Shown one piece after another: positions 2,725-16,976 of a DNA stretch of 19,905 nucleotides. Position 1 is the stretch's first letter. The number at the start of each line of letters is the position of its first letter. This stretch comes from Paraphysomonas bandaiensis (lineage: Eukaryota > Protista > Chrysophyceae): positions 1 through 19,905 of the forward strand of contig CBFFRP010000510.1 in assembly GCA_965644295.1 (NCBI GenBank), given 5' to 3'. The notes beneath the pieces were generated by a model. That model searched no databases, was not told the DNA's origin, and saw nothing but the letters and a program-made list of their open reading frames with translations. Made by a program: the position numbers and the translations under genes.

Positions 2725-3274
2725 TAATTGATGTAAACGGTCTGCCCGTTGATCTCGTGCGTCTATTCATACATACAGTATATTCTCGTGATTACAATAT
2801 ATATATATACCTGCGTTATTTTATTTTTCCCTTATTGATGAGCATATTTGGGTTTTCGTTATAAACGTTTAGGTATTGTTGAAGTTGATCTTCACATGTG
2901 ACGACTTGTTCTGCACTGTATCCTTGCGCACGCTAGGATATAGGGAGGCACTTGGATTGTGATATCCTGCGTACGGTAGTACACTGTACTGCAGTACACT
3001 GTACAGGAGTACAGTGGTATACAGTACAGTGGTATACAGTACAGAGTATACAGTCATGTCTTGCATACTGAGTCATACATGATATACAGTATCGTATAGA
3101 GTTATACTGTACAGTACGACGTAGGTGTTGGATGCAGCGTAGTACACCGAGGACTGATTTTTGCCCTTGGAGTCATTTCGTTAGTCTGATGTTGCATGTG
3201 TGTTTTGTTGATCAGCTTATAATTAAGCATTATTCGCTTCTCTGCTTTCTCTCGCTTACGTATATAATATAACA
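2725..3274 (+). repeat. Probable 3' LTR of the Copia element
   Basis: Follows the RNase H end and a purine-rich PPT-like tract (AGACGGGAG, 2714-2722). Noncoding and could end in AACA at 3274. The 5' TG is not intact, no partner LTR is in the window, and the end overlaps the viral inverted repeat. Confidence 0.5.
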
Positions 3275-3361
3275 ACATTATTATATTCTATAATTAAATT
3301 AGACTTCAAGGTTTTATAGGGTTTTTGTATAAATTTGTTTTCTTTTCTAATTATATATACA

Positions 3362-3625
3362 ATGTTAATCGATGTAATTATTAAGTATAAAAAAAAAAGT
3401 GGCCCACTCTGTTTAGAACTCTTTGAATCATTAGACCATTCTAAATTTACCGCTCGTAGTGTACAATTCTTTAAAGAAATAGACCATTCTAAATTTAACG
3501 CTCGTAGTTCTAACCCTAATTTGTTTTGGCATGATTATACAATAAATATTAAAGACTTTGAAGAATTTGTCATGCATTTTGAAGATGTGATCGATGTAAT
3601 TAATGTAAGAATAAAACATTACTAA
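3362..3625 (+). CDS. Hypothetical 87-aa protein with an internal 16-aa duplication
   Basis: The ATG at 3362 follows TATATATACA, like other element genes (the track's TTG start at 3335 is less likely). Contains FESLDHSKFTARS / FKEIDHSKFNARS at a 48-bp period. Confidence 0.6.
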   Translation: MLIDVIIKYKKKSGPLCLELFESLDHSKFTARSVQFFKEIDHSKFNARSSNPNLFWHDYTINIKDFEEFVMHFEDVIDVINVRIKHY

Positions 3626-3772
3626 AATTAAGGTTTTTTAAACAAAATTGGGGGTTTTTATTTCTAAAATTAAGGGTTTTTATATAAATCAAGGTTTTTA
3701 TATAAAAATTGGGACTTTTTTGCGTAAATTCAAGATTTTTATAAAAATATGGGTTTTATAAAACTTATTTTG
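3626..3772. repeat. Degenerate ~20-bp periodic repeat (AAATT-RRGG-TTTT-ATA-like units)
   Basis: About 7 loose units such as aaattaaggttttt, aaattggggggttttt, aaattaagggttttt, aaatcaaggttttt, aaattgggactttt, aaatatgggtttt. Mirrored at 16690-16935. Confidence 0.7.
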
Positions 3773-3773
3773 G

Positions 3774-3911
3774 AAAACCGAGTTATATTATATTTTCACA
3801 GTATGGTTTACTCTCATCCAATACTTTTGCGACAAAATTGTCGCAATTGTATTGGCTGTCATTCATTTTCAAGTTATTCGGCAAAACCGAGTTATATTAT
3901 ATTTTCACAGT
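3774..3911. repeat. Two exact 29-bp direct repeats flanking a hairpin
   Basis: AAAACCGAGTTATATTATATTTTCACAGT at 3774-3802 and 3883-3911. Between them is the hairpin CCAATAC-tt-TTGCGACAA-aa-TTGTCGCAA-tt-GTATTGG at 3818-3855. Confidence 0.9.
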
Positions 3912-4210
3912 TTGCTTCATTCTCACAATCCCAGATATTCCCACATTGGTATGTTTTGTGTTGCTGTGTATGTTGTGTTGTTGTTGTGATGCTGTTGTGT
4001 TGTTTATGTGTCTACGAGTATATACATACATTATATATATATTCATTCATAATATTCATTGTCATTGTGTCTATATCATTGTGATATATAACAAGCATGG
4101 AAATAAAGGAAATATGATCTCATTATGAGTGCATATCAGGTATATTGTCTTTGTTTGGTTATATGTATCGTATTCATTATATTCATTGTTGTTGTTATGT
4201 GGGGTTCTTC

Positions 4211-4252
4211 TTCTTTCTCACAAGCATTTGTGAAAACCCCAAAGGCTTCATT
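4211..4252 (-). pseudogene. 3' remnant (14 codons) of the HNH endonuclease gene
   Basis: Reads NEAFGVFTNACEKE on the minus strand, identical to the C-terminus of 15631-16137, with three synonymous nucleotide differences. Confidence 0.92.
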
Positions 4253-4454
4253 TCTTTCTTTCTTCTAACATCTTTTTCTCTTCTTGTGTTCGTTTACATA
4301 AAGCAGTTTTATAATGTAGTTTAATTCTATTTTTACAAACTTGTCTTTCGCATAACTCACATTTGACCTTTTCACAATTATAAGCTATGAGTTTGTCTCT
4401 GTTCTTCTTGTAGTATTCCTTTTGATAAGCAATATTCTTTTCTGACTTGTTCAT
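4248..4454 (-). CDS. Small basic Zn-finger-like protein (CxxC...H...C), copy 1
   Basis: Motif CELC-x11-H-x5-C. Nearly identical to 15364-15582, with mostly synonymous differences between the copies. Confidence 0.85.
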   Translation of the reverse strand: MNKSEKNIAYQKEYYKKNRDKLIAYNCEKVKCELCERQVCKNRIKLHYKTALCKRTQEEKKMLEERKK

Positions 4455-4553
4455 GTATGTTATAATAATACTATATATTTTTATTTTTTTAAATGACTTT
4501 ATATAAAATTAAGCAAATAGATATTTCATATTTTATATATACACATAATATAT

Positions 4554-5573
4554 ATGAATAAGAAATCATTCAACGATATAATAAAGAAACTTGATATTGA
4601 TGAAACATTCACAAAAGAAGGAAAGAAACAAAAGAAATTTAATAGCATTAGAAAGAATACAGTTCAAAAAGCTAATTATAATATGATGGCTGATTTATTG
4701 GAACTTCCTGCAACTTCAAAAGGATATAGATACTGTTTTGTCATATGTGATTTATTCAGTAGACGATTTGACATTGAACCAATTAAGAATAAAGATTCTC
4801 AAACTGTCTTAAATGCTATGAAAGAATGCTTTAAACGATCATATATTGATAAACCTTATGCTTCTATAAGAACTGATGACGGAAATGAATTTAAAGGCGT
4901 GTTTTTCAAATACTTACATGATAATTCAATTTTACATAAAGTCGCTTTACCCAATAGACATAAACAAATGGCTAATGTTGAAGCCCTAAATAAGCAATTA
5001 GCAAGACTTTTTAATGGTTATATGAATAAAAAAGAGAAAGAAACAAAGAAAGTATTTCGCGAATGGACTGATATAGTACCAATAGTTAGAAAAGATTTAA
5101 ATGAATTCAGAGAAAATTTAACAGTTAATGAACCTGGATTCATTAACTATTCTATTAAAGCAAAATATAATGTGGGTGATATTGTTTATGAGAAGCTTGA
5201 CAGTCCTGAAAATGCTTTAGGACATAAACAAAATACGAAAAATTTTCGTGTTGGTGATTATAGATATTCACAAATACCAAAGAAGATCATTAACGTTCTT
5301 TATTTCACTGATAAACCTTATTACAGATATATATTACAAGGATTGCCTAATGTCTCTTATTCTCAACATGAACTTATTAAAGCTGATAATGAGAAAGACA
5401 CAAAATATGAAGTAAATAAAATTATTGGAAAGAGAACCAAAAATAAAAAAGTTGAATATTTAATATGGTGGAAGAAATATAAAAAAAATGAAAGCACATG
5501 GGAACCTGAGAAAAACTTAATTGAAGACGGATTACAAAATACAATTAATGATTACAACAAAAACAATTCTTAA
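4554..5573 (+). CDS. Retroviral-type (rve) DDE integrase with C-terminal chromodomain, copy 1
   Basis: Catalytic motifs ADL, TDDGNEF and VEALN. Chromodomain YEVNKIIGKR...EYLIWWKKY...STWEPEKNL. No N-terminal HHCC finger. The architecture matches Polinton-type integrases. Confidence 0.95.
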   Translation: MNKKSFNDIIKKLDIDETFTKEGKKQKKFNSIRKNTVQKANYNMMADLLELPATSKGYRYCFVICDLFSRRFDIEPIKNKDSQTVLNAMKECFKRSYIDKPYASIRTDDGNEFKGVFFKYLHDNSILHKVALPNRHKQMANVEALNKQLARLFNGYMNKKEKETKKVFREWTDIVPIVRKDLNEFRENLTVNEPGFINYSIKAKYNVGDIVYEKLDSPENALGHKQNTKNFRVGDYRYSQIPKKIINVLYFTDKPYYRYILQGLPNVSYSQHELIKADNEKDTKYEVNKIIGKRTKNKKVEYLIWWKKYKKNESTWEPEKNLIEDGLQNTINDYNKNNS

Positions 5574-6856
5574 CATTCATGTTTTTCATAATTGGCGTAT
5601 TCTTTATCACATTTATTACAAATATGTCTGTAATGTATAGCATTATAAAATATTATTTTTCCACTTGATTTCTCTTCTGGAGTTGGATAATACTTATTCT
5701 TTATTGAAAAATTAAAGTCCTCAATTAATGTTAATCTGTCTGTGTGAATTGCTACTAATTTGTCGATTAAGTTGTTTTTCATTACTAATTCAAACATCTT
5801 CTTCCTTCCTAATGACACTAGAAACGGCTTTATCCTTGCAAAGTTATACTTATAAGCTTCATCGCTTTTCACACATTTATATGTTCCTGAGTTTGTAATC
5901 TTCCTTAGTTTGTATTCACTATCAACAGTGCTGTTTATTCTTGTTAAGTCTAAATCATCAAAGTCATCAAAATATAAGTTCTTAAAGCTTGCCAGTGTTC
6001 CTCCTATTGTTGAGATGAGATGTTTTACTAACTTGTTCTTTGGTAACTTCTCTTTGACACTTAACATATCTTTCAACCATTCACCGAATAGTTTATCACC
6101 ATCCATTAAGTCATCATAGTCCCATATTAAAGCGTTATAGTCATATTCATCATCTACTTTCAGTAATTTGAATGTTAAGCCGAAGTAATCTTTATATTTA
6201 TACACTGAGTTTAATAATGTTGAGGTATAATGATTATCTTGTGAAAAGTTAAATACGTTTGTGAATTGATTGTTTGTATAGTTTATTTCAACTCTATATA
6301 TTCCATATTTCAATTTTCCATATTCAACACTATCTAAATTATATACTTTACCTTCTCTATATGGTATCTTCATATTGATTAAGAGATTGCTATAATAACT
6401 ACTAAAGTCTCTACTATAACACATCACGGGTTTTTCTTTGTAATCTAAGTTTAATGTTATCAATCCTGAATTGTAACAACGCTCCATTATGTAAAATTCT
6501 GTCTTTGATACTCTCTCAAACTTCTTTAATGTCTCTGCCTTGTGGTATGCCTTCCAATTGTATAATACGGCGTCATTATGATTGAAATACTTCTTATACT
6601 TGATTGAAAAATACTTACTACTCTTTGTTTTGATTGAAACTTTCTTTAATGCATCACACAATATATTAAAATCTTTTTTAAACCTTTTCAAGTCTGACTC
6701 TGTGTTATCATATCCTTGTAACATACTAAACTGATGACTCTTTTCGTGAAATATCTCTTGTAAATCACATCTTCTTACTTCGTCATCTTCATCAGTCATA
6801 TATACAGCTTCATTCATATCATAATAATAGTAATATACTTTATAGTTCTTACTCAT
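5570..6856 (-). CDS. Short divergent family-B (protein-primed-like) DNA polymerase, copy 1
   Basis: Motif A-like DFSSYYS, B-like KHLISTIGG, VSLGR (cf. TxxG/AR), C-like IHTDR. No recognisable Exo motifs. C-terminal CxxC...HxC. Confidence 0.7.
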   Translation of the reverse strand: MSKNYKVYYYYYDMNEAVYMTDEDDEVRRCDLQEIFHEKSHQFSMLQGYDNTESDLKRFKKDFNILCDALKKVSIKTKSSKYFSIKYKKYFNHNDAVLYNWKAYHKAETLKKFERVSKTEFYIMERCYNSGLITLNLDYKEKPVMCYSRDFSSYYSNLLINMKIPYREGKVYNLDSVEYGKLKYGIYRVEINYTNNQFTNVFNFSQDNHYTSTLLNSVYKYKDYFGLTFKLLKVDDEYDYNALIWDYDDLMDGDKLFGEWLKDMLSVKEKLPKNKLVKHLISTIGGTLASFKNLYFDDFDDLDLTRINSTVDSEYKLRKITNSGTYKCVKSDEAYKYNFARIKPFLVSLGRKKMFELVMKNNLIDKLVAIHTDRLTLIEDFNFSIKNKYYPTPEEKSSGKIIFYNAIHYRHICNKCDKEYANYEKHEC

Positions 6857-6927
6857 ATATAATACATGTACATTTTATATTTTAAACCATTTTATTTATT
6901 TTATATATTTTATATATTTTATATATT

Positions 6928-7266
6928 TTAATATAATATTGTAATTTCAAAATAAAAATAATCACTGAATTTTTCTTCAACTGTCTTAGCTTCAATACCA
7001 TATGAACGATAATAATTAATCATCATCCATTTTAAATCGTCTTCTATAAAATCCTGTGATTTTAACGTCTTCATACCATCTATACCCATAGCACGAATTA
7101 TAAAGTTATTTTTCTTATACTTCTTCGCTATTGCCTTGTAGAACTTGTTTATTTCATCTATACTTATCTTTTGATTCTTTTTTGGTGTAAATTGTGTCGT
7201 TGATTGTAATACGAATCCTTTCTTATTCTTCTTTTCAATTTTCTTTGTATCAAAATTCTTACTCAT
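6928..7266 (-). CDS. Unknown 112-aa protein, homolog of 12424-12747
   Basis: Shares the blocks KxxIxxIxxxYKA, IDG..T(L/I)KS and KFxD..Y with the 107-aa ORF at the mirror position. Has the element's upstream motif. Confidence 0.85.
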   Translation of the reverse strand: MSKNFDTKKIEKKNKKGFVLQSTTQFTPKKNQKISIDEINKFYKAIAKKYKKNNFIIRAMGIDGMKTLKSQDFIEDDLKWMMINYYRSYGIEAKTVEEKFSDYFYFEITILY

Positions 7267-7329
7267 ATAATATATATATATACATTATATATTTTTAAAC
7301 CTTTTTATTTATTTTGTATATTTTGTCAT

Positions 7330-7572
7330 CTAATTTTTAGATTGTATTTTTTTAACTTCCTTCTTTATGTTGTATATTTTAGTATTATTAAAAAAGTCTC
7401 TGTATATGTGATGAGGTCTCTTACTTTCCATTCGTCCTTCAGTTATCTTGTTATTCTTTCTTACTAAGTGTAACTCTATATCTAAGTCTTTTGCAACTTC
7501 TTTCAATGTTTTATATTCTTTGATTAAATTATTGTCTCCATCAATTTGAACAACTCTATATTTCATACTCAT
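7330..7572 (-). CDS. 80-aa protein with a NUMOD1/IENR1-like helix-turn-helix DNA-binding domain
   Basis: VVQIDGDNNLIKEYKTLKEVAKDLDI resembles the NUMOD1 pattern. Upstream motif present. Absent from the right arm. Confidence 0.65.
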   Translation of the reverse strand: MSMKYRVVQIDGDNNLIKEYKTLKEVAKDLDIELHLVRKNNKITEGRMESKRPHHIYRDFFNNTKIYNIKKEVKKIQSKN

Positions 7573-7633
7573 ATATTATATATATATATAATATATTTTT
7601 ATTTTTTTAACCATTTTTATTATTCAATATATT

Positions 7634-9280
7634 TTATATCATTTTCATCAAATCATCTATATCATCATCATCTAGTTCTACAGCCTTCATTTGTTTAAGC
7701 TTCTCTTTGTTATTCTTTTGTTCATTCTCTTCTAAGCGGTTCTTTCCTTTTTTCTTAGGTGGTTTAATTTCTACAAATAGACTCTCTACTTCGCTTTCTG
7801 TTTCTTTAACTTCCTTATTTTTTAGTTTCTTCTCCTTTCTTTCTTTTCTCTTTTCTTTTTTCTTTTCATATGCTTCTAGTTTCTTCTGTAGCTCTTCTAT
7901 TTGTTTCTTCTGAGATTCAATCTCTTTGAGTAGTGAGTTGTTGTCTTGGTCAGATGTCTCAACTTCCTTCTTGTTCTTATCTATTGATGTTCCATCACTG
8001 AATTCATCTAATTCATGAATCCATTTATTCTTTGTGGCGATTTGTAATAGTTCTTTGTTTGATACTATATACTTATTATATAGTTTTCTGTTTATCTTCT
8101 TCACCACATAGTTAATTCCTATCTCTTTTAACTTCTCGTTCATTCCAATTTTTCCCAAGGGCCTTATATTCAAAGACATGCAATAACAAGTATACTCTTC
8201 TAATAGTTCATCTACTGTATGATCAATACTAGCTTTATTCAAAACAAACTGATACTTAATAAACTTGCAAACATTATTTAATCGTTTAGCTATTGATGCC
8301 ATCTTTGATTTCGTCTCTGGGAAGTCTTGAGAATTAAAGTCTGTTGTGTCCACTTCTCTGAAGTAGCAATACAAAGCATAACCTACACTATCAGTAAAGC
8401 AATTATCATATATGTTCTTCCAATACAGTTTGTTTGCTTCGCTTAAATTTCCTTGTTTGTGTGTTGATATATCTAAACAGAAAAATCTTCTTCCATCATC
8501 GCTAATATCATGATTTGATAATAAGCAGTAGTTATTTATATTTTCAGCATCATAAGGATTACAACCTTTACTTTCTAATGTAATCATATTTGATGTAATC
8601 TGTCTCTTTAACTTTGATCCAACCGCCATCCATTCACCAGTGCTGAATGTTTCAAGTTCTTCAAAAGATACGAACAATTTACCACCTAGAATAGAATTGA
8701 AGTTACTCTTTAAACATTGACTTCCTGTTTCAATAGTCAAGTCTTTTGGTAACACATGACTAATTATCATCTGAGGATATGTTGATTTTCCTACTCCTTG
8801 GGCTTCTGTTTTCAACACTAAACATGAATTGTTTTTGTTTCCTTTACACATGTTAGCAGTCCATTTTAATAAATGTGAATATATAGCTTCATTGTTTGAA
8901 CATATAACCTCTTTCATATAACCTAAGAACACTTCAGCATATTTTCTATCATGTTTTGGTAATGATGAATAAGGCTTGACTGCTGGTAGTTGAGAACACA
9001 AATTAAGTTTATCGTCATATAAAGTTGGTTTATTTATTTTATACACAGGTGTCAATATATTGTCATGTTCGCATAAATACCATGACTTAAACTGCTTAGG
9101 AAATCTATTAATGTATACTTTTGACATTTCTTCTTGCTTCTTTATTTCATATTTACCATTTTTTTTAAAGGCGTGGTCTCCTGTACTCAAAGGGATAAAG
9201 TATTCGGCAATATACTTTTTAGTGTCATTTATAGAATCAGCAGAAAGCTCTTTTAATTTTTTCAATTCAAAGTTACTCAT
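7634..9280 (-). CDS. SF3 / D5-like replicative helicase, copy 1, with no evident primase domain
   Basis: Walker A QGVGKST, Walker B FVSFEE, sensor LLSNH, arginine finger GRRF. Charged coiled-coil C-terminal tail. Confidence 0.88.
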   Translation of the reverse strand: MSNFELKKLKELSADSINDTKKYIAEYFIPLSTGDHAFKKNGKYEIKKQEEMSKVYINRFPKQFKSWYLCEHDNILTPVYKINKPTLYDDKLNLCSQLPAVKPYSSLPKHDRKYAEVFLGYMKEVICSNNEAIYSHLLKWTANMCKGNKNNSCLVLKTEAQGVGKSTYPQMIISHVLPKDLTIETGSQCLKSNFNSILGGKLFVSFEELETFSTGEWMAVGSKLKRQITSNMITLESKGCNPYDAENINNYCLLSNHDISDDGRRFFCLDISTHKQGNLSEANKLYWKNIYDNCFTDSVGYALYCYFREVDTTDFNSQDFPETKSKMASIAKRLNNVCKFIKYQFVLNKASIDHTVDELLEEYTCYCMSLNIRPLGKIGMNEKLKEIGINYVVKKINRKLYNKYIVSNKELLQIATKNKWIHELDEFSDGTSIDKNKKEVETSDQDNNSLLKEIESQKKQIEELQKKLEAYEKKKEKRKERKEKKLKNKEVKETESEVESLFVEIKPPKKKGKNRLEENEQKNNKEKLKQMKAVELDDDDIDDLMKMI

Positions 9281-9499
9281 ATATAATATACAAACATATT
9301 ATTTTTTTAAACCTTTTTTATATTTTATATATTTTATATATTTTTTAAAACTATTTTGTTTATTGTTTGTTGCGTGTGTGTATTCAACTATTTATTAACC
9401 TTCATCCGTTTTTTCTTTTTGACATCTTTCATGGCCTTTTTAAAATTATCTCTTTAAACCATTTTGCTTTTTAATAATTTTTTAATTGGTAATAACGTA

Positions 9500-9670
9500 A
9501 AAATTATTTTGAATAGAATAAATTATTTTGATAAAATATTTTGAATAGAATAAATATTTTATGAATAAATTATTTTGAAAAAATATTTTGAATAGAATAA
9601 ATATTTTTGATAAATTATTTTGAAAAGTATTCATGAGTTAAACAATGAAAATTATTTTGAAAATTTATTT
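9500..9670. repeat. Iteron-like tandem array of AAA(T)TATTTTG(AATAGAAT) units
   Basis: About 9-10 loose copies of the core. TATTTTGAATAGAATAAAT occurs three times. Confidence 0.85.
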
Positions 9671-9857
9671 TTTGCTTGCAACTACTACGATGACTATCAC
9701 TAACCCTTACCTTATATCTTTCCAGCAACTACGACTAGTCCGCTTTATTACTTCGTCTACTAATAAGTTTATTTTTGAGTATAGTAATTAGTATATTTAT
9801 TCTATTATCATACGTCTTTTATAAAAAAAATTATTAAAAATTTCTAAAAATATACTC

Positions 9858-9929
9858 AAAAATATACTATAAAATATTAAGGTTCTTTATTACTTTTTGA
9901 ATTTTAAGTATATTTTATAGTATATTTTT
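9858..9929. repeat. Perfect 20-bp inverted repeat with a 32-bp spacer
   Basis: AAAAATATACTATAAAATAT (9858-9877) pairs with ATATTTTATAGTATATTTTT (9910-9929). A second 13-bp pair lies at 9771-9783 / 9851-9863. Confidence 0.9.
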
Positions 9930-10004
9930 TAAATTTGTTTTTTAATTTATTACTTTTTAAATATTATATTAACTTTATATATTTAAGTTATTTTATAGCT
10001 TTAA

Positions 10005-10212
10005 GCCCTGTTTACAGAGGGCGTTATATTAGCTTGCTAATGGAAGAGAGGATAAGAAAAACTTGATTTTTCGTTCATCGTATTTGTTCTGTGTGACACA
10101 CAGAAAGGCGGAAAGGGGAGCCGGGTCGTTCTGTGCCACTTAGGCATCCCTCCTGAGCCGGGAGGCTCTCCGTATAGTTATAAAACATTCGTTTTATAAC
10201 TCTTCCTTATCA
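10005..10212. other. GC-enriched multi-hairpin island at the symmetry centre (candidate origin or structured RNA)
   Basis: At least six stem-loops read directly: 10005-10022, 10028-10041, 10056-10072, 10087-10105, 10115-10171 (enclosing 10134-10146) and 10176-10201. Function is inferred only. Confidence 0.6.
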
Positions 10213-10612
10213 CTCTAAGTATATTATTAATACTCTTATATAATACTATACTTTAAATACTAATATTAATAATCTATACTTTAAACTGTTTTATAATACT
10301 ATATACTTTATACACTTTATACATTAAAAAGTAACACACCTGACAACATGGATAAAAAGGATAATATTTTAAAGGATAATTAAAAAACTGGTATTAATAG
10401 TTTTGAAATTGAAAAATCCCCCCACACTGTCCAGCATGAATAAGTGATAGAGTCACAAGCATAGTTGAAGAGATGTAAAAGAGTGTGTGGAATGTGAAAA
10501 AGTGATAACGATTATAAAGTACAATCACACGCAAAAAACAATATACAAAATCTTTTTTTTTAAATTAATATAAAACAATTTAAAAATTAAAATATAATAC
10601 TATTATATAGAT

Positions 10613-12358
10613 ATGGAAATTCTAACTTTACCAAAGGAAGACTTCAGTATTTCAAAGATGCAAGACTTAGAGAAACATGGAGAACTTAAAGACAATCTAG
10701 ATGTAATAAAGTATGTGTTTAAGTATTACTACGAAATACAAGGCGGTCTATACTACTTTTATGATGTTGAAGAAGACAAATTTGTTATGAAGACTAAAAA
10801 AGATTTCAAAAACGAAGTTCTTGTAAAACTTGAAAAAGAAAAAGAGATAACGAAACAAATGAACAAGAACAACAAAATTTTCAAGATAGCATGTAAAATA
10901 GGTAAACCGAGAATATACAAGAACAATTCTAAATACTATATAAATGAATCTGGGTCATTCTTACATACTAATTACAAGTCATTCAAAGAGTATGATAAGA
11001 AAACTAAAGAGTCAGTCTATAAGTTTATTGATTTCATGAGAGAGGTCTCATGTAACAATGACGAGAAGACATTAAAAGCATTGTTGTTATGGTATGCTTT
11101 AATAGCAAGAGGTATAAAGACTGAATTGATGATAGTTAGAAGAACAAGTGCTCAAGGAGTTGGAAAATCAACAGAACCAGATTTCTTTTATGAGTTTGTG
11201 TTTGGACACAGTGTATCAGTAAGAGTTACAGATTTATCACCTTTCCTCACAGCAAATAACAAGCTACTACTTGGTAAGGTATTCGTAATAGTAGAAGATA
11301 TTGAAGACTTAACAGACAATGATTATAAAAGATTCTCATCTAAAATTAAAACTTATGTGACTGAAAAAACTACATTGTATGCTGACAAATACGAAAAGCA
11401 ATTTGATGCACCTAATATAAACAACTATGTAGCAACTACCAACTATCATATGAAAGATTCGTCAGGACGTAGAGCAGCAGAATTAGATATATCTTTAGCA
11501 AGAAAGCAAGATTTTGAATATTTCAATGACTTAAGAGAAACATGTTTTAATATGAAGTGTGGCGAAGCGTTCTTCTCATACTTACTAACTGAAATCACTG
11601 ACGAACAATGTTCAAAATACTATCCTCAAAGAGACTTTCCAGAGACAGAGAATAAGAGAATAGCTATATCAAGTAACTTAGACAGTGCTTATAGATTCAT
11701 TAAAGAGATGTTTGTTTTAAAGAGATTACCAATTAAGAGAGTTCCAAGAAAGAGTTTATATGATGACTACGCAGAATGGGCATCAAGTAGTGGAGTAAGA
11801 AAGTTAAAGTCAAATACATTTTATCAAAAACTAGAAGAAGTCAAAATAACAACTATAAAGTCGAATGGATTCAGATATAATTATTCTGTGAAAGAGTTAC
11901 ATTCTATAGCAGAAAAAGAGAAGTGGATATGTAAATATGATGAATTTGATGGTGATAACACTTATGAAACTAACTGTATTCAAGATGAAGAAGCTGAAGA
12001 AGTCAAAAGATTGAAAGATGAAATCCAACTATTGAAAGAAAGAATAAAAGAACTTGAGAAGAGTGATAACAAGAAGACAACAAAAGAAGATAAGCTTATT
12101 AAAGAGTTAGATGAACTTGATGAACTTGACGAACTTGATGAACATGAATATGACGAAGAAGACTTGAACAAGTCATTTGACTTTGGTGTAAACACTGTAA
12201 TCAAAGCAAAGAACAAACTAATTACGACAAATGAGAAGAAAGAGGAAAAGAAGACAACGAAAGAGACTAAAGTTAACAAAGATGTCAATCTCGTAATGTT
12301 ACCAGAACAGACAGACTTGACAGATGAAGATATCAAAAATTTCACTAGTTTTTTTTAA
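10613..12358 (+). CDS. SF3 / D5-like replicative helicase, copy 2, with no evident primase domain
   Basis: Walker A QGVGKST, Walker B VIVED, sensor ATTNY, GRR. Shares NINNY and DFPET with copy 1. Acidic/coiled-coil tail with DEL repeats. Confidence 0.88.
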   Translation: MEILTLPKEDFSISKMQDLEKHGELKDNLDVIKYVFKYYYEIQGGLYYFYDVEEDKFVMKTKKDFKNEVLVKLEKEKEITKQMNKNNKIFKIACKIGKPRIYKNNSKYYINESGSFLHTNYKSFKEYDKKTKESVYKFIDFMREVSCNNDEKTLKALLLWYALIARGIKTELMIVRRTSAQGVGKSTEPDFFYEFVFGHSVSVRVTDLSPFLTANNKLLLGKVFVIVEDIEDLTDNDYKRFSSKIKTYVTEKTTLYADKYEKQFDAPNINNYVATTNYHMKDSSGRRAAELDISLARKQDFEYFNDLRETCFNMKCGEAFFSYLLTEITDEQCSKYYPQRDFPETENKRIAISSNLDSAYRFIKEMFVLKRLPIKRVPRKSLYDDYAEWASSSGVRKLKSNTFYQKLEEVKITTIKSNGFRYNYSVKELHSIAEKEKWICKYDEFDGDNTYETNCIQDEEAEEVKRLKDEIQLLKERIKELEKSDNKKTTKEDKLIKELDELDELDELDEHEYDEEDLNKSFDFGVNTVIKAKNKLITTNEKKEEKKTTKETKVNKDVNLVMLPEQTDLTDEDIKNFTSFF

Positions 12359-12423
12359 AATAATATAAATAATATAAAACAATTTAAAATTTTAATATAT
12401 ATATTTAATATATATATATACAT

Positions 12424-12747
12424 ATGAATTTTACAATCAAAGATATAAACACTGTATCAAAAGGCAAATACAAGATAGGAGCAAAGAGAATACGACCTAA
12501 CACAGGAAAGAAGCTACAAATAAACGATATAAGAACACTTTATAAAGCTTTGTTAGATGATAAAGGAATTGACAGACATAAAATCAACATAGCGATAAAA
12601 ACTATTGATGGTAGATATCTAACGATAAAGAGTTTTCAAGACAATGAAATTAAAGACTGGGATGATGTGGAATATCTGAAGAACAAAGTTAAAGATGACA
12701 AAAAGTTTCTTGACTTTGAATATGCTGATTTCTATGTGAAAAACTAA
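12424..12747 (+). CDS. Unknown 107-aa protein, homolog of 6928-7266
   Basis: Shares motif blocks and synteny with the 112-aa ORF. Upstream AAAACAATTTAAAA motif. Confidence 0.85.
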   Translation: MNFTIKDINTVSKGKYKIGAKRIRPNTGKKLQINDIRTLYKALLDDKGIDRHKINIAIKTIDGRYLTIKSFQDNEIKDWDDVEYLKNKVKDDKKFLDFEYADFYVKN

Positions 12748-12807
12748 ATTAATATAAAATAATTTAAAATAGTATAAAGAATTATTATATATATATAATA
12801 TATAATA

Positions 12808-14253
12808 ATGAGTATTAATAAGACAAAGTTTACAAGTAAGAATGGTGAAGAGAGAGTATACAACAAAGAAACAGGTGAAAGCCGTTATTTGAGATACTTC
12901 TATAGAGAGAACGGCAAAACATATTATATGTCACACGATAAAGATGATTTGAACTGTCAAACAGAACAAGAGAGATGTGATGATGGATTGAATAAATATA
13001 ACTACTTTGAACTGTTTGACGGTTATGAAGGTTCAAAAGAAGGAATACGAAAGTATATGAAAGACTTTAAAGAATGTTGTGATATACTATTAAAAGATGG
13101 TATATTTTATAAGAAGTATTACAATCATAAGAGTGCTACAATGCTAACCTTTTCAAGATTCTCAAATATGAAAAAGAACAGTGTAAGTATGAACAATAAG
13201 AAAGTTAGATTAGAAAACATAAACTTCAAAGAATCTTATGTTTTGGAGAAGTGTCATAATGCTGGTCTTTGTTGTTTAGATGAACAATACAAAGGTAATG
13301 TTCTAAAGTGTTATGGATACGACTACGGCGCTTTCTATCCTTATATTCTGTCTAAAAGTGACTTGAAGGTTGCTACCTCACAACCAGTATATAAGATAAT
13401 GTCTCAAGATAAGTTTATGAAGAAGTTGTCAAAAGGTAAGTTGAAATATGGAGTATACAATGTCAAAATAACAATTACAGAAAAAGATAATAAAACAAGT
13501 CCTTCACAGTTTTATAAGAAGTTTTCATTTTCAAGTGATAATTGGTATACTCATATAGACTTGTCATATGTATATTCACAAATAGACAACTTTGAATTAG
13601 AGTTTAAGATAAATGAACAAGCTAAAGATTATAACACTATGATATATGACGAAGATGACTTAATAGACAGCAAAGTTATATTTGAGAGTTGGTATGACAA
13701 ATTAAAGAGTATGAAAGATAAGAATAAGAATATGTTAATAAAACACTTGATGTCCAGTATTTGGGGTTACTTGTGTGAACATAAGAAACTGTATTACTCT
13801 CAAGAAGAGTTTATGAAACTTGATGACGAAGATGTCTCAGACATAACAGACAAAGACAATACAAAATATAAGGTATTGAAAGAGAAGATGAGTATTGACA
13901 GTGATGATAATATAAAGATTGACTTTACATTGATTGATAAAGACCAACCTTATAAATACAACATAGCAAGAATGAAGCCATTTCTTATGTCATATTGTCG
14001 TTGTTTTGTGGCGAAGATGATAGATAGAGAAGGTATATTACATAAGATAATAAGAATCCATACAGACGGTATAGTATTGAACAGTAAACACGAATTCAAA
14101 GGCGAATACAAGCCATTGAAAGAATCCAAAACAACAGGCAATATACTCTGGAAAAACACAAATACCTATTTTCATAAGTGTAAAAAGTGCGATTTTTTGT
14201 ATTCTCATAGAACAAAAAAGTTGATGGGTAAAGATGAAATACACGATTGTTAA
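12808..14253 (+). CDS. Short divergent family-B (protein-primed-like) DNA polymerase, copy 2
   Basis: Motif A-like DYGAFYP, B-like KHLMSSIWG, MSYCR, C-like IHTDG. Shares GKLKYG(I/V)Y, YKYNxARxKPFL and KYxNH with copy 1. C-terminal CxxC...HxC. No recognisable Exo motifs. Confidence 0.75.
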   Translation: MSINKTKFTSKNGEERVYNKETGESRYLRYFYRENGKTYYMSHDKDDLNCQTEQERCDDGLNKYNYFELFDGYEGSKEGIRKYMKDFKECCDILLKDGIFYKKYYNHKSATMLTFSRFSNMKKNSVSMNNKKVRLENINFKESYVLEKCHNAGLCCLDEQYKGNVLKCYGYDYGAFYPYILSKSDLKVATSQPVYKIMSQDKFMKKLSKGKLKYGVYNVKITITEKDNKTSPSQFYKKFSFSSDNWYTHIDLSYVYSQIDNFELEFKINEQAKDYNTMIYDEDDLIDSKVIFESWYDKLKSMKDKNKNMLIKHLMSSIWGYLCEHKKLYYSQEEFMKLDDEDVSDITDKDNTKYKVLKEKMSIDSDDNIKIDFTLIDKDQPYKYNIARMKPFLMSYCRCFVAKMIDREGILHKIIRIHTDGIVLNSKHEFKGEYKPLKESKTTGNILWKNTNTYFHKCKKCDFLYSHRTKKLMGKDEIHDC

Positions 14254-15266
14254 TCCTTCTTGTTGTATTCATCAATCAAGTTCCTTAATCCATCTTCAAT
14301 TAAGTTTTTCTCAGGTTCCCATGTGCTTTCATTCTTTCTATAGTTCTTCCACCATATCAAGTATTCAGTTTTCTTATTCTTTGTTCTCTTTCCAATAATC
14401 TTTTTAACTTCATATTTCGTTTCCTTTTCATCTTTAGCCTTCATGAGTTCATATTCAGAGTAAGAGACATTAGGTAATCCTTCTAATATATATCTGTGAT
14501 AAGGTTTATCAGTGAAATAAGCAACTTTTATAATCTTCTTTGGTATTTGTGAATATCTATAATCACCAACACGAAAGTTTTTCGTATTTTGTTTATGTCC
14601 TAAAGCATTTTCAGGAGTGTTGAGTTTTTCATATACAACATCACCAACTTTATATTTTTGTTTAATAGAATGGTCAATGAATCCAGGTTCATTAACTGTT
14701 AAGTTTTCTCTGAATTCGTTCAAATCTTTTCTGACTATTGGTATTATATCAGTCCATTCTTTATATACTTTCTTTGTTTCTTTCTCTTTTTTATTCATAT
14801 AACCGTTAAACAGTCTGTCTAATTGCTTATTCAATGCTTCAACACTCGCCAATTGTTTATGTCTATTAGGTAAAGCTACTTTATGTAAGATTGAATTGTC
14901 ATATAAGTATTTGAAAAAGACACCTTTGAATTCATTTCCGTCATCTGTTCTTATAGAAGCATAAGGTTTATCAATATATGGTCGTTTAAAACATTCTTTC
15001 ATAGCATTTAAAACAGTTTGAGAATCTTTATTCTTGATTGGTTCAATGTCAAATCGTCTTGTGAATAAGTCACATATAACAAAACAGTATCTATATCCTT
15101 TTGAAGTTGTTGGAAGTTCTAACAAATCAGCCATCATGTTATAATTAGCCTTTTGAATAGTATTCTTTCTAACACTATTAAATTTCTTTTGCTTCTTTCC
15201 TTCTTTAGTAAATGTTTCATCAATATCAAGTTTCTTTATTATGTCATTGAATGATTTCTTGCTCAT
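14250..15266 (-). CDS. rve DDE integrase with chromodomain, copy 2
   Basis: Same DDE and chromodomain motifs. About 40 differences in 338 aa versus copy 1 by manual count, mostly conservative. Confidence 0.95.
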   Translation of the reverse strand: MSKKSFNDIIKKLDIDETFTKEGKKQKKFNSVRKNTIQKANYNMMADLLELPTTSKGYRYCFVICDLFTRRFDIEPIKNKDSQTVLNAMKECFKRPYIDKPYASIRTDDGNEFKGVFFKYLYDNSILHKVALPNRHKQLASVEALNKQLDRLFNGYMNKKEKETKKVYKEWTDIIPIVRKDLNEFRENLTVNEPGFIDHSIKQKYKVGDVVYEKLNTPENALGHKQNTKNFRVGDYRYSQIPKKIIKVAYFTDKPYHRYILEGLPNVSYSEYELMKAKDEKETKYEVKKIIGKRTKNKKTEYLIWWKNYRKNESTWEPEKNLIEDGLRNLIDEYNKKD

Positions 15267-15363
15267 ATATATTATGTGTATATATAAAATATGAAATATT
15301 CAGTTGCGTAAATTTTATATAAAGTAATTTAAAAAAATAAAAATATATAGTATTATTAATAAT

Positions 15364-15582
15364 ATGAACAAATCAGAAAAGAACATTGCATATCAAAAAG
15401 AATACTACAAGAAGAATAAAGACAAACTCATTGCTTATAACTGCGAAAAGGTCAAATGTGAGTTATGTGGTCGACAAGTTTGCAAGAATAGAATTAAACT
15501 ACATTATAAAACTGCTTTATGTAAACGAACACAAGAAGAGAAGAAGATGTTGGAAGAAAGAAAGAATCAAATAAATGAATAA
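15364..15582 (+). CDS. Small basic Zn-finger-like protein, copy 2
   Basis: CELC-x11-H-x5-C. Two internal substitutions versus copy 1 and a slightly longer C-terminus. Confidence 0.85.
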   Translation: MNKSEKNIAYQKEYYKKNKDKLIAYNCEKVKCELCGRQVCKNRIKLHYKTALCKRTQEEKKMLEERKNQINE

Positions 15583-15630: not shown

Positions 15631-16137
15631 ATGACTGAAGAGTGGAAAGTGATAGATGGTTACAACAATAATTACAGTGTATCAAACAAAGGAAATGTAA
15701 AGAATAATAAGACAAATAAGATATTGAAACAAAACATAAATACAAAGGGATACAATATACTTTGTCTCTGTGTAAATGGAAAGCGAAAAACAATAGAAGT
15801 TCACAGGTTAGTTGCATTGTCGTTTATACCAAATCCAGAAAATAAGCCTTGTGTGGACCATATAAATAATAACCCAACAGACAACAATGTCAATAATTTG
15901 AGATGGGTTACAAATTCAGAGAATCAATATAACCAAAAGTTGAGCAAAGCAAATACATCAGGAGTAAAAGGAGTCTGTTATCACAAAAGAGATAAGAAGT
16001 GGAATGCGCAAATAACATTAGACGGCATTAAAATTCACCTTGGATACTTTGACACAATAGAAGAAGCAAAACAAGCAAGGATAAAAAGAGCAAATGAAGC
16101 CTTTGGAGTCTTTACAAATGCTTGTGAGAAAGAATAA
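15631..16137 (+). CDS. HNH homing endonuclease (NUMOD4 + HNH + AP2-like domain)
   Basis: NUMOD4-like EEWKVIDGY..YSVSNKGNVKN. HNH core VHRLVA..FIPNP...VDHINNNPTDNNVNNLRWVTNSEN. AP2-like NTSGVKGV...KWNAQI...HLGYFDTIEEAKQAR. Confidence 0.93.
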   Translation: MTEEWKVIDGYNNNYSVSNKGNVKNNKTNKILKQNINTKGYNILCLCVNGKRKTIEVHRLVALSFIPNPENKPCVDHINNNPTDNNVNNLRWVTNSENQYNQKLSKANTSGVKGVCYHKRDKKWNAQITLDGIKIHLGYFDTIEEAKQARIKRANEAFGVFTNACEKE

Positions 16138-16449
16138 GAACTCCTATATAACAACAACAATGAACACAATGAATATGACTCATACACATAATCAAAGCTA
16201 TATACTTGATATGCCCTTATAATGACACCATATTTCCTTTATTTTCATGTTTGTTATACATCATAATGATGTGTAACAATGACAATGAATATTATGAATG
16301 AATATATATATAATGTATGTATATACTCGTAGACACACCAACAACACAAGACACACAACACAACACAACACAACACAACAACAGAGCAATACAGAATACA
16401 GACTGAAAATATTACATTTATATATTTAAATCATGTCGTGACGATGTAT

Positions 16450-16547
16450 GAAAGACGCTGGAGTCGTTCCGGTGGTAATTAGTCTGTGGCGGCAGATGAA
16501 AGCCCTGGTTCGATTCCCGTTGCCGCCACATCGAAAAGGCGTTTTTC
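16450..16547 (+). ncRNA. Candidate Pol III-type structured small RNA
   Basis: B-box/T-loop match GGTTCGATTCC (16507-16517) inside a perfect 10-bp stem TGTGGCGGCA/TGCCGCCACA (16485-16494/16521-16530). Outer stem GAAAGACGC/GCGTTTTTC and a T5 run at 16542-16546. Expression is not shown. Confidence 0.45.
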
Positions 16548-16605
16548 TGAAAAAATATGGAAAATTCAAATACTGTTGATGCAGGTGAAAAAACCACATC
16601 AATAC

Positions 16606-16670
16606 GCTATGAGAATTTCCAGACCATTTTGGGGAAGGAATTTCTTGCGATGGTCTGGAGTTCTCATAGC
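16606..16670. other. Long hairpin (~21-bp stem, one bulge)
   Basis: GCTATGAGAATTTCCAGACCAT (16606-16627) pairs with ATGGTCTGGAGTTCTCATAGC (16650-16670). Confidence 0.8.
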
Positions 16671-16689
16671 AGCCATTTTGCTAAAAACA

Positions 16690-16935: not shown

Positions 16936-16976
16936 AATTTAATTATAGAATATAATAATGTTGTTGTATTATATAG

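What the first reader, a model, noticed from the sequence alone, without database searches (positions are those of the whole stretch)
5570..14253. Three-gene replication cassette, present in two distant versions: primase-less SF3 helicase + ~110-aa unknown protein + minimal PolB-like enzyme
Seen: both arms keep the co-oriented order helicase > small protein > PolB-like gene with intact ORFs, although each protein pair shares only motif-level identity. Established: Polinton, adenovirus and phi29-type pPolBs carry a proofreading domain and need a terminal protein, while D5-type helicases are usually fused to a primase. Inference: neither a primase nor an exonuclease/terminal-protein region is evident here, so the trio may be an undescribed minimal replisome whose priming mode is unknown.
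Basis: partly seen in the sequence, partly recalled or inferred. Interest (0 to 1): 0.85.

Follow-up and report, generated by a model that had tools for sequence, protein, structure and literature searches.

The report
Two mavirus-like virophage replication modules, head-to-head
The region is where two virophage-like mobile elements related to mavirus meet head-to-head, each carrying the known helicase plus exonuclease-less DNA polymerase module; the one open point is a small conserved protein that may serve as the polymerase's protein primer.

Summary
Both arms carry intact, co-oriented genes for an SF3 helicase, a ~110-aa protein and a 428/481-aa polymerase. The pairs are 27%, motif-level and 32% identical.

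The left arm has an extra 80-aa gene. Each arm ends in a convergent rve+chromodomain integrase; these two are 89% identical, so an inverted repeat brackets the region.

A pLDDT-91 model of the polymerase matches mavirus pPolB (E 1e-21) and phi29 polymerase (E 5e-12). It has no exonuclease, TP or vOTU domain. The helicase has no primase domain.

The module is widespread, with 2,278 polymerase cluster representatives. The small gene lies upstream of the polymerase in 41/42 loci and the integrase downstream in 62/63. Relatives carry a Sputnik-type penton gene, a packaging ATPase gene and TIRs.

It therefore maps to mavirus-related elements with palm-only pPolB plus DUF5906 helicase, described in 2024 and 2026. 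It is not an undescribed replisome.

The two versions come from different lineages and sit on near-identical backbones, which points to module swapping.

Still open: the small protein has the strand/helix order of the TP/D1 fold, an invariant Tyr, and co-diverges with the polymerase. It is a candidate stand-alone terminal protein (~40%). The rival is piPolB-like self-priming.

The parts
3261..4247 (.). Outer part of the left inverted-repeat arm. Non-coding and repeat-rich, homologous in pieces to 16092-16975. Homology to the right arm stops at 3261, the point where the 510-aa gene starts on the right.
4248..4454 (-). 68-aa C2HC zinc-finger-like protein, left copy (the right copy is 15364-15582)
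   Evidence: dN/dS 0.03 between the copies
4554..5573 (+). Left rve + chromodomain integrase (339 aa), convergent with the left polymerase
   Evidence: dN/dS 0.126 against the right copy
5570..6856 (-). Left palm-only pPolB-type DNA polymerase (428 aa), intact
6928..7266 (-). Left small alpha/beta protein (112 aa), candidate stand-alone terminal protein
   Evidence: (P0053)
7330..7572 (-). 80-aa protein in the left arm only. Homologues sit between helicase and small gene in L004, L006, L014 and L089.
7634..9280 (-). Left SF3 (D5-like, DUF5906) helicase (548 aa) with no primase domain and a coiled-coil/charged C-terminal tail
9281..10612 (.). AT-rich spacer between the divergent helicase genes. 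It holds the two helicase promoter-like motifs, a 32-47-nt tandem array (9501-9631), a local imperfect palindrome (9824-9877 / 9902-9951) and a GC-richer ~190-nt island (9990-10180). Read as the two elements' subterminal regions abutting.
10613..12358 (+). Right SF3 helicase (581 aa; DUF5906 + Pox_D5) with no primase domain. Its C-terminal ~120 aa tail is shared with an otherwise unrelated D5_N/P-loop protein in L094.
12424..12747 (+). Right small alpha/beta protein (107 aa), candidate stand-alone terminal protein
12808..14253 (+). Right palm-only pPolB-type DNA polymerase (481 aa), intact. Catalytic residues D172, K312 and D420.
14250..15266 (-). Right rve + chromodomain integrase (338 aa), convergent with the right polymerase
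15364..15582 (+). 72-aa C2HC zinc-finger-like protein, right copy
15631..16137 (+). NUMOD4 + HNH_3 + AP2 homing-endonuclease-like gene, whole in the right arm only. The left arm keeps only its last 14 codons.
16138..16976 (.). Outer part of the right inverted-repeat arm, with an extra GC-richer island (16430-16700) absent from the left arm

Best explanation
**What it is.** 5570-14253 is the junction of two mavirus-related virophage-like elements lying head-to-head. They are of the type with a palm-only pPolB plus DUF5906 helicase, called 'pMVRE group 1'. Each contributes the replication module that sits at one end of such elements:
- an SF3 helicase without a primase domain;
- an optional 80-aa protein;
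- a ~110-aa alpha/beta protein;
- a ~420-480-aa family-B polymerase of the protein-primed class, reduced to palm/fingers/thumb with TPR-type insertions;
- a convergent rve-chromodomain integrase.

**Origin of the two modules.** They come from different lineages of the family. Their backbones (integrase, zinc-finger gene, non-coding repeats) are about 88% identical. The picture is replication-module swapping between close relatives, not a local duplication.

**How it most likely works (inferred, not shown).**
- Replication starts at the element's ends by protein priming.
- The small protein is the most likely primer. It would be a stand-alone counterpart of the TP/D1 domain that mavirus carries fused to its polymerase, with the invariant Tyr84 as the linking residue.
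- The polymerase extends without proofreading and the separate SF3 helicase unwinds.
- The integrase inserts the copy into cellular or giant-virus DNA.

**Confidence by step.**
- Identity of the module: about 0.85.
- Two elements rather than one: about 0.7.
- Small protein as TP: about 0.4.

The overall figure of 0.7 refers to the identity and arrangement, not to the TP step.
For: **Polymerase**
- The AF2 model has pLDDT 91.4.
- Foldseek best hits are mavirus pPolB (E 1.4e-21, TMq 0.64) and phi29 polymerase (E 5.5e-12).
- Across 195 family sequences the motif A Asp, motif B Lys and second motif C Asp are invariant.
- All 54 complete ORFs are 368-456 aa, with at most 67 residues before the profile start. 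There is no room for Exo, TP or vOTU domains.
- No DxE-type acidic pair is conserved in the N-terminus.

**Helicase**
- DUF5906 hits in 14/16 members, D5_N in 2/16, and no primase family in any.
- The PHROG 'primase' profile matches only through its C-terminal helicase part.
- The PDB match is limited to profile positions 118-368.

**Synteny across 85 independent loci**
- Small gene just upstream of the polymerase: 41/42.
- Convergent integrase: 62/63.
- Helicase: 12/17.

**Virophage identity of relatives**
- Sputnik V18/19 penton gene in L006, E 4.8e-22.
- A32-type ATPase gene in L004.
- Perfect TIRs of at least 272 bp in L004.

**Literature**
- Mavirus pPolB lost the exonuclease domain and pairs with a separately encoded S3H (PMC11161782).
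- PRT-pPolB + DUF5906 + chromo + rve defines pMVRE group 1 (PMC13215967).

**Two lineages**
- Each polymerase is closer to dozens of foreign sequences than to its partner: rank 62 and 28 of 195.
- The integrases are 89% identical, with dN/dS 0.13 and dS 0.48.
- L005 and L094-L097 join a right-type small gene and polymerase to a left-type integrase (94-96%).
- Each arm has its own upstream motif.
- In 10 of 15 loci the contig ends 157-829 nt upstream of the helicase gene. This fits the 1.3-kb spacer being two abutting subterminal regions.

**Small protein as TP**
- The element order in the AF2 model is b-b-a-b-b-a-loop-b. This equals the TP/D1 topology described in PMC11161782.
- Thr67, Tyr84 and Lys94 are invariant.
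- Foldseek rank 3 is the mavirus pPolB, probability 0.98, E 0.02.
- Its divergence tracks the polymerase (Spearman r 0.52, 0/500 permutations). The helicase tracks the polymerase less well (r 0.25).
Against: **Element identity and arrangement**
- No capsid gene and no terminal inverted repeat of either element lies inside the window.
- No independent contig spans 9466-10560, so the head-to-head junction is unconfirmed.
- The left element has no counterpart of the right-hand genes beyond 3261. It is truncated, or it is a replication-integration-only unit.

**Small protein as TP**
- No Foldseek hit for the small protein reaches E 1e-3. The tool does not say which part of mavirus pPolB it matched.
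- The model is only pLDDT 72, and Tyr84 sits in a low-confidence helix rather than clearly in the loop.
- Sequence and profile searches give nothing for the small protein.

**Other limits**
- I could not obtain the mavirus polymerase sequence to align domains directly.
- The polymerase family carries the same two motif changes that mark self-priming piPolBs.
Confidence: 0.7

Rival explanations
1. The polymerase primes itself de novo, as the primer-independent PolBs (piPolB) of pipolins do. The small protein would then be an accessory DNA-binding or processivity factor, not a primer.
For: - In 195 family members the first Asp of motif C is never the common residue (H 111, Q 46, Y 10, C 10).
- The KxY-equivalent strand reads K-[T/S]-[T/S]-G in about 90% of members.
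- piPolBs are singled out by the same two changes, printed in the paper as SxTTDG and KTRG (PMC5695915).
- No TP domain is fused to the polymerase.
- A Cys/His cluster ends 42 of 183 polymerases, including both window copies.
Against: - piPolBs keep an active exonuclease domain. This family has none.
- The nearest folds are mavirus pPolB and phi29 polymerase.
- Protein-primed archaeal PolBs also vary in motif C, so the changes are not diagnostic.
- A small gene conserved in 41/42 loci and co-diverging with the polymerase asks for a tight partner role.
- No piPolB was available here for a direct comparison.
Confidence: 0.2
2. Priming is supplied in trans by the primase of a co-infecting giant virus or of the host. 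The helicase recruits it. The small protein has another role, for example end-binding, transcription or packaging.
For: - No primase is encoded in the cassette.
- According to the papers read, virophages replicate with giant viruses.
- Gene-specific upstream motifs suggest dependence on a foreign transcription system.
- The helicase body is swapped freely while only its C-terminal tail is kept.
Against: - The polymerase fold belongs to the protein-primed class, with insertions of TPR1/TPR2 size between motifs A-B and B-C.
- A relative has TIRs, which fits end-initiated replication.
- pPolB is stably linked with DDE integrases acting on the same ends (bioRxiv 10.64898/2026.10.13.758929).
Confidence: 0.15
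3. The whole 3261-16975 stretch is one composite element that keeps two different replication modules between long inverted repeats, and both modules are in use.
For: - The layout is mirror-symmetric, with 88% inverted repeats of at least 1.3 kb bracketing both cassettes.
- All genes in both arms are intact.
- The integrase copies are under purifying selection.
- Genomes with several replicases, and repeats bracketing a replication module, have been reported.
Against: - The right arm runs on into further element genes, one of which uses the right-type motif (18521). The left arm stops at 3261.
- In relatives the module sits once, next to a terminus.
- The spacer looks like two subterminal regions.
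- Left-type and right-type cassettes occur separately in marine contigs.
Confidence: 0.15
4. The head-to-head junction is an assembly chimera joining two co-occurring virophage genomes.
For: - Both cassette types occur in the same marine (Tara) data sets.
- Independent contigs stop at 9465 on the left side, and none crosses the spacer.
Against: - The junction lies in unique AT-rich DNA, not in the shared integrase repeat where assemblers usually mis-join.
- The arms are only 88% identical, so they would not collapse.
- Tandem and adjacent integrations of such elements are documented.
Confidence: 0.1

Closest known systems
Replication module of mavirus (Cafeteriavirus-dependent mavirus) and mavirus-like virophages, as dissected in PMC11161782
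   Same: - The pPolB has lost the exonuclease domain and is the best structural match (E 1.4e-21).
- The SF3 helicase is encoded as a separate gene.
- There is an rve integrase with a chromodomain.
- GC content is low and the setting is marine.
   Different: - Mavirus pPolB is 617 aa and is described as TP-vOTU-PALM.
- Here the polymerase is 368-481 aa with no N-terminal TP or vOTU region.
- A conserved ~110-aa gene sits immediately upstream instead.
pMVRE group 1 / 'palm-retaining truncated pPolB' elements (PMC13215967)
   Same: - Palm-only pPolB, DUF5906 helicase, chromodomain + rve integrase, and GIY-YIG or other endonuclease genes (L006).
- Abundant in freshwater and marine metagenomes.
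   Different: - That paper does not mention TP, vOTU, priming or a small conserved partner gene.
- Direct membership could not be checked, because its supplementary lists are not held.
phi29-type protein-primed replication (stand-alone TP gene next to the pPolB gene)
   Same: - Polymerase fold (E 5.5e-12).
- A small gene directly upstream of the polymerase gene.
- TIRs in a relative.
   Different: - phi29 polymerase has an active exonuclease domain.
- phi29 TP is an elongated helical protein unrelated to the alpha/beta TP/D1 fold.
- phi29 has no SF3 helicase and no integrase.
PRD1 / adenovirid terminal proteins and the D1 domain of polinton pPolBs (PMC11161782)
   Same: - The order of secondary-structure elements is the same: a 4-5-stranded sheet with two helices.
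- A conserved hydroxyl residue lies near the last helix-strand junction.
   Different: - The match rests on topology and a weak Foldseek hit only.
- The protein is much shorter than stand-alone PRD1 or adenovirid TPs, which carry helical extensions.
piPolB of pipolins (PMC5695915)
   Same: - The first Asp of motif C is replaced.
- A K-T-x-G-type strand stands in place of KxY.
- TPR-type insertions are present.
   Different: - piPolBs keep a working exonuclease domain.
- They are bacterial or mitochondrial, and not linked to an SF3 helicase, an rve integrase or virophage genes.
pPolB-S1H fusion proteins of Tlr1, PLVs and transpovirons
   Same: Exonuclease-less palm domain combined with a helicase activity.
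   Different: There the helicase is superfamily 1 and fused, and TP-vOTU is retained. Here it is a separate SF3 helicase and there is no TP-vOTU.
Multi-replicase and tandemly integrated polisuvirus genomes (bioRxiv 10.64898/2026.10.13.758929)
   Same: - Adjacent elements with near-identical backbones but different replication modules.
- pPolB always paired with a DDE integrase.
- Homing endonuclease genes nearby.
   Different: Here both modules are of the same class (S3H + small protein + pPolB) but from distant lineages, and they are arranged head-to-head.

Membership tests
Family B DNA polymerase, protein-primed class (pPolB) | Palm catalytic motifs A, B and C with the metal-binding aspartates | tested here: met
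   D172 is present in 192/192, K312 in 195/195 and D420 in 194/194. The first motif C position is not Asp. PMC5695915 states that only the second carboxylate is needed.
Family B DNA polymerase, protein-primed class (pPolB) | TPR1 and TPR2 insertions / overall fold of phi29-type enzymes | tested here: met
   The top Foldseek hits are only pPolBs: mavirus 1.4e-21, phi29 5.5e-12, GA-1, tectivirids and adenovirids. There are 140 residues between motifs A and B and 108 between B and C, with a long beta-hairpin at 354-377. The subdomain-by-subdomain mapping is my inference.
Family B DNA polymerase, protein-primed class (pPolB) | N-terminal 3'-5' exonuclease domain | tested here: not met
   Conserved columns start at reference residue 73. 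E142 is the only invariant acidic column before motif A, and D86 (87% acidic) and E147 (89% acidic) are the only other conserved ones. Complete ORFs are 368-456 aa with at most 67 residues before the profile start.
Family B DNA polymerase, protein-primed class (pPolB) | A cognate terminal protein | tested here: inconclusive
   The candidate is the small upstream gene. Support comes from synteny in 41/42 loci, TP/D1-like topology, an invariant Tyr, and a Foldseek hit to mavirus pPolB at E 0.02.
Mavirus-type pPolB (TP-vOTU-PALM) | Fused N-terminal TP (D1) and vOTU (D2) domains | tested here: not met
   No N-terminal extension in 54/54 complete ORFs. The rare extensions in the wider family are NUMOD4, weak HNH_3 or DUF5710, not the small protein.
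Mavirus-type pPolB (TP-vOTU-PALM) | Palm domain without exonuclease, plus a separately encoded S3H and an rve integrase | tested here: met
   description in PMC11161782
pMVRE group 1 (PMC13215967) | PRT-pPolB together with DUF5906, chromodomain and rve | tested here: met
   definition
pMVRE group 1 (PMC13215967) | Placement in the group-1 clade of the pPolB tree | not tested
   No reference sequences of that study could be obtained, and no supplement is held.
Virophage (capsid module) | Virophage-type major and minor capsid proteins, packaging ATPase, protease | tested here: inconclusive
   None lies inside the window. Relatives with the same cassette carry a Sputnik V18/19 penton gene (L006, E 4.8e-22) and a Pox_A32 ATPase gene (L004).
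D5-type primase-helicase | N-terminal AEP primase (or other primase) domain | tested here: not met
   About 180 residues precede Walker A, and 2/16 members hit D5_N there. No primase family was hit in 16/16 members. PHROG 'primase' profile positions 1-516 are unmatched.
D5-type primase-helicase | SF3 helicase core (Walker A/B, D5-like C-terminal domain) | tested here: met
   DUF5906 E 8.7e-11 and 3.4e-12; Pox_D5 E 1.5e-7; G184, K185 and R287 invariant.
piPolB (pipolins) | Conserved exonuclease domain plus SxTTDG and KH-X8-KTRG motifs | tested here: not met
   The exonuclease domain is absent. The motif variants are only similar: x-T-D-[G/N/S] and K-[T/S]-[T/S]-G. No conserved K-H lies upstream of them.

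The most novel reading that the evidence does not exclude
In this large branch of mavirus-related elements the terminal protein has been split off as a free-standing ~100-140-aa gene, and the vOTU protease has been dropped. The ~110-aa TP, the ~420-aa palm-only polymerase and a swappable SF3 helicase would then form the smallest protein-primed replisome known. The helicase would dock through its conserved C-terminal tail, and the invariant Tyr84 would be the linking residue.
Probability: 0.35. Interest if true: 0.6.

Novelty: new member of a known kind. Interest (0 to 1): 0.38.

Why it matters
**Limited novelty.** The cassette is not a new kind of replisome. It is the replication module of mavirus-related virophage-like elements, which are abundant in lakes and oceans.

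**Two points still matter.**
- The polymerases here lack the fused terminal-protein and protease domains described for mavirus. A small partner gene, almost always present and co-diverging with the polymerase, stands just upstream. This gives a concrete candidate for how palm-only pPolBs start synthesis. The question can be settled by structure comparison and distribution surveys.
- The window and its marine relatives show natural module exchange at gene-boundary resolution. The helicase body, the small-protein + polymerase pair and the integrase backbone recombine independently. This supports recent claims that replication modules of small eukaryotic DNA viruses are highly mobile.

Tried and rejected
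**Searches on the polymerase that found nothing**
- Pfam, PHROGs and NCBIfam.
- phmmer and profile searches of PDB sequences. Only the predicted fold identified it.

**Searches of public collections that found nothing**
- IMG/VR scans with the polymerase alignment and the integrase. The helicase alignment was too divergent to scan.
- tblastn against the GenBank phage collection.

**Hypotheses tested and rejected**
- A small protein-polymerase fusion ('Rosetta stone') was looked for in family members with N-terminal extensions. The extensions are NUMOD4, weak HNH_3 or DUF5710, or have no Pfam match, and hhalign against the small-protein family gives nothing.
- The small protein against PDB sequences and Pfam gave only chance-level hits.
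- A TIR partner of the spacer was sought inside the window. Only promoter-like motifs recur.
- The left flank 1-3260 has no similarity to the right-hand element genes.
- tRNA and Rfam searches of the window, and relaxed Rfam searches of the two GC-richer islands, gave nothing credible. The islands are unrelated to each other.

**Lookups that failed**
- Accession lookups in papers for the source assemblies found nothing.
- The right-arm polymerase and helicase are not on record as exact sequences.

**Rejected idea.** An in-situ duplication followed by divergence is ruled out, because each polymerase has dozens of closer relatives elsewhere.

Full report
**Layout**

The window is AT-rich, with 25-30% GC over the region. 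The finding's region has mirror symmetry.

- Left arm, minus strand: helicase 7634-9280 (548 aa), an 80-aa gene 7330-7572, a 112-aa gene 6928-7266 and a 428-aa gene 5570-6856.
- Right arm, plus strand: helicase 10613-12358 (581 aa), a 107-aa gene 12424-12747 and a 481-aa gene 12808-14253.
- Each arm ends in a convergent integrase gene, 4554-5573 (+) and 14250-15266 (-). Each overlaps the polymerase stop codon by 4 nt.
- All these reading frames are intact.

The inner genes are very different between arms. The helicases are 27% identical and the polymerases 32%. The small proteins match only at E 0.005 in a pairwise comparison.

The integrases, in contrast, are 89% identical. They lie in an 88% inverted DNA repeat that runs outward, with indels, to about 3261 and 16975.

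**What the genes are**

*Helicases.* They hit DUF5906, and the right one also hits Pox_D5.
- In a 16-member alignment of relatives, 14 hit DUF5906, 5 VapE-like, 3 Pox_D5 and 2 D5_N. None hits any primase family.
- A PHROG profile named 'DNA primase' is matched only through positions 517-806 of 855, which is its helicase part.
- The PDB match covers profile positions 118-368 only.
- About 180 residues precede Walker A, and they resemble D5_N. 'Primase-less SF3 helicase' holds.

*The 428/481-aa proteins.* They have no hit in Pfam, PHROGs, NCBIfam or PDB sequences.
- An AlphaFold2 model built on 38 homologues is confident, with pLDDT 91.4 and pTM 0.89.
- Its Foldseek neighbours are exclusively protein-primed family-B polymerases.
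- These are mavirus pPolB (E 1.4e-21, TMq 0.64, 19% identity), a 339-aa Harvfovirus protein, phage GA-1, tectivirid, archaeal-virus and adenovirid polymerases, and phi29 polymerase in nine PDB chains (E down to 5.5e-12).

*The integrases.* They are rve + chromodomain.

**Polymerase anatomy**

- A library-wide profile search finds 2,278 cluster representatives, 959 of them at E below 1e-30. Nearly all are 390-450 aa.
- Over the 195 sequences I hold, the motif A Asp, motif B Lys and second motif C Asp are invariant.
- Conservation begins at residue 73 of the 481-aa reference. E142 is the only invariant acidic column before motif A. D86 and E147 are the only other conserved ones.
- All 54 complete ORFs in fetched loci are 368-456 aa, with at most 67 residues ahead of the profile start.
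- There is therefore no exonuclease domain and no fused TP or protease domain.

Two motif variants stand out.
- The first motif C position is His, Gln, Tyr or Cys rather than Asp.
- The strand that carries KxY in other PolBs reads K-[T/S]-[T/S]-G.
- PMC5695915 reports the analogous pair (printed there as SxTTDG and KTRG) as the hallmark of primer-independent piPolBs.

A Cys/His cluster ends 42 of 183 family members, including both window copies.

**The cassette elsewhere**

I scored 85 independent loci from metagenomes and assemblies with profiles.
- The small gene lies just upstream of the polymerase in 41 of 42 loci that have enough flank. Three of these are on the opposite strand.
- A convergent integrase follows in 62 of 63.
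- A helicase of the profiled type precedes in 12 of 17.
- The 80-aa family appears in some loci.

Relatives show what kind of element this is.
- L006 carries a Sputnik V18/19-type penton gene (E 4.8e-22) and a GIY-YIG gene.
- L004 carries a Pox_A32 packaging ATPase gene. It is bounded by perfect inverted repeats of at least 272 bp inside a 62-kb contig.
- In 10 of 15 loci with a complete helicase gene, the contig ends 157-829 nt upstream of it. The module therefore sits next to a genome end.

**Comparison with the literature**

- PMC11161782 (Krupovic et al. [quoted passage not shown] It has a TP-vOTU-PALM organisation and works beside a separately encoded S3H.
- PMC13215967 (Wei et al. 2026) names such enzymes 'palm-retaining truncated pPolBs'. 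It finds DUF5906, chromodomain, rve, MCP and GIY-YIG in 'pMVRE group 1', which contains mavirus and is common in freshwater and marine metagenomes.
- The window's cassette fits this description.
- The difference from mavirus itself is that TP and vOTU are missing from the polymerase, and a small gene stands in front of it. Neither paper mentions such a gene.

**The small protein**

- The family has 30 cluster representatives of 92-143 aa. Thr67, Tyr84 and Lys94 are invariant, and a second Tyr at position 85 is present in 26/30.
- The AF2 model is moderate, with pLDDT 71.7. Its elements are strand 3-13, strand 16-25, helix 33-44, strand 54-60, strand 65-68, a low-confidence loop, helix 81-88, a short helix 92-95 and strand 97-106.
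- This is the order given for the TP/D1 fold in PMC11161782: a four-stranded sheet, sometimes with an extra first strand, plus two helices. The Ser/Tyr linking residue lies between the second helix and the last strand.
- Foldseek against viral models gives no hit below E 1e-3. Rank 3 is the mavirus pPolB itself (E 0.021, probability 0.98, TMq 0.50). The tool does not report which part of that protein is matched.
- Pairwise divergence of the small protein tracks that of the polymerase: Spearman r 0.52, n = 40 loci, 0 of 500 permutations as high. This is tighter than for the helicase (r 0.25, 27/500) or the integrase (r 0.35).
- No fusion of the small protein to the polymerase was found.
- I rate 'stand-alone terminal protein' as the best single reading, at about 40%.

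**Why two versions**

- Each polymerase is closer to dozens of sequences from other samples than to its partner: rank 62 and 28 of 195. The pair is not a local duplication.
- The left cassette occurs at 99.5% identity in Tara Oceans contigs.
- Relatives of the right cassette occur in the same kind of marine data.

Those relatives are mosaics.
- Their small gene and polymerase are 80-89% identical to the right arm, but their integrase is 94-96% identical to the left arm.
- The upstream region of one (L096) matches the left helicase's upstream region at 93%.
- Their helicase body is a third, unrelated D5_N/P-loop protein. It shares only the last ~100 residues with the right helicase.

Further points on the two arms:
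- Each arm has its own upstream motif. AAAACAATTTAAAA lies 41-52 nt before the right-arm start codons and before a downstream 61-aa gene. AAAWGGTTTAAAA lies before the left-arm genes.
- Purifying selection is evident. dN/dS is 0.125 for the right polymerase against L005, 0.126 between the two integrases (dS 0.48) and 0.03 for the zinc-finger gene.
- The 1.3-kb spacer holds tandem arrays and a local palindrome, like the subterminal region next to the TIR of L004.

Together this points to two related elements with different replication modules lying head-to-head. This is the kind of arrangement and module turnover described in bioRxiv 10.64898/2026.10.13.758929.

The right element continues to the window's end. 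The left one shows no homologue of those genes beyond 3261. That position is exactly where L094 and the right arm start the 510-aa gene. The left element is therefore truncated, or it is a replication-integration-only unit.

**Caveats**

- No contig independent of the window crosses 9466-10560.
- No TIR of either element is visible in the window.
- No capsid gene lies in the window.
- I could not obtain the mavirus polymerase sequence or any piPolB for direct alignment.
- The host is unknown. The left flank (GC 30-41%, a 30-nt tandem array, no long ORFs) may be cellular DNA.

Noticed in passing
window 15631-16137 (and 4211-4252): A NUMOD4 + HNH_3 + AP2 homing-endonuclease-like gene is whole only in the right inverted-repeat arm. 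The left arm keeps just its last 14 codons at 100% identity. The gene is preceded by the left-arm type upstream motif (15591).
   Followed up: partly
window 9990-10180: A GC-richer (45%) ~190-nt island lies in the AT-rich spacer. Its ends pair and it folds better than shuffles on the plus strand (z -2.9). It has no Rfam match and no similarity to any fetched locus.
   Followed up: partly
window 16430-16700: A second GC-richer island is present only in the right arm. It has a structured segment at 16432-16545 (z -3.6) that contains a tRNA T-loop-like string, but ARAGORN calls no tRNA. A near-perfect ~30-bp hairpin lies at 16606-16670 (z -6.9). Rfam hits are at chance level only.
   Followed up: partly
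window 16977-18509: A 510-aa ORF has 12.5 copies of a 42-nt (14-aa) repeat, including a perfect 126-nt duplication. It is predicted to be coiled-coil, possibly a fibre-like protein. Homologues directly follow the integrase region in L094 and directly precede the helicase in L098.
   Followed up: partly
window 19177-19860 (-): A 227-aa protein has a weak lipase / alpha-beta-hydrolase signature (Pfam Lipase E 8e-4; NCBIfam SA1320 family E 5e-13).
   Followed up: no
window 4248-4454 (-) and 15364-15582 (+): A 68/72-aa C2HC zinc-finger-like gene lies next to each integrase. It is the most constrained gene of the repeat (dN/dS 0.03) and is also present in L094 and L095.
   Followed up: partly
window 1-3260: The left flank has higher GC (30-41%), a 4.4-copy 30-nt tandem repeat at 568-700, no long ORFs and no similarity to the element genes. 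It may be cellular DNA or an unrelated insertion.
   Followed up: partly
proteins P0126, P0147, P0169, P0201, P0208, P0127: A minority of polymerase-family members carry a ~100-165-aa N-terminal extension. It hits NUMOD4 (with weak, sub-threshold HNH_3 in three) or DUF5710. A DNA-recognition or nicking module is thus fused to the palm-only polymerase.
   Followed up: partly
L094:126-1931 versus window 10613-12358: A helicase-position protein is unrelated in its first ~500 residues (weak D5_N, P-loop). It shares the last ~100 residues (58% identity) with the right helicase. This suggests that the charged C-terminal tail is a conserved docking segment.
   Followed up: partly
L004:6597-21200: A complete relative of at least 14.6 kb has perfect TIRs of at least 272 bp and 13-nt subterminal arrays. 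It is embedded in a 62-kb metagenome contig, so it is integrated in a larger genome of unknown nature.
   Followed up: partly
BFVD hit A0A3G5A8K3: A 339-aa 'DNA polymerase' assigned to a Harvfovirus (giant-virus) metagenome bin matches the model at E 4.8e-16, TMt 0.76. It may be a related element inside, or binned with, a giant-virus genome.
   Followed up: no
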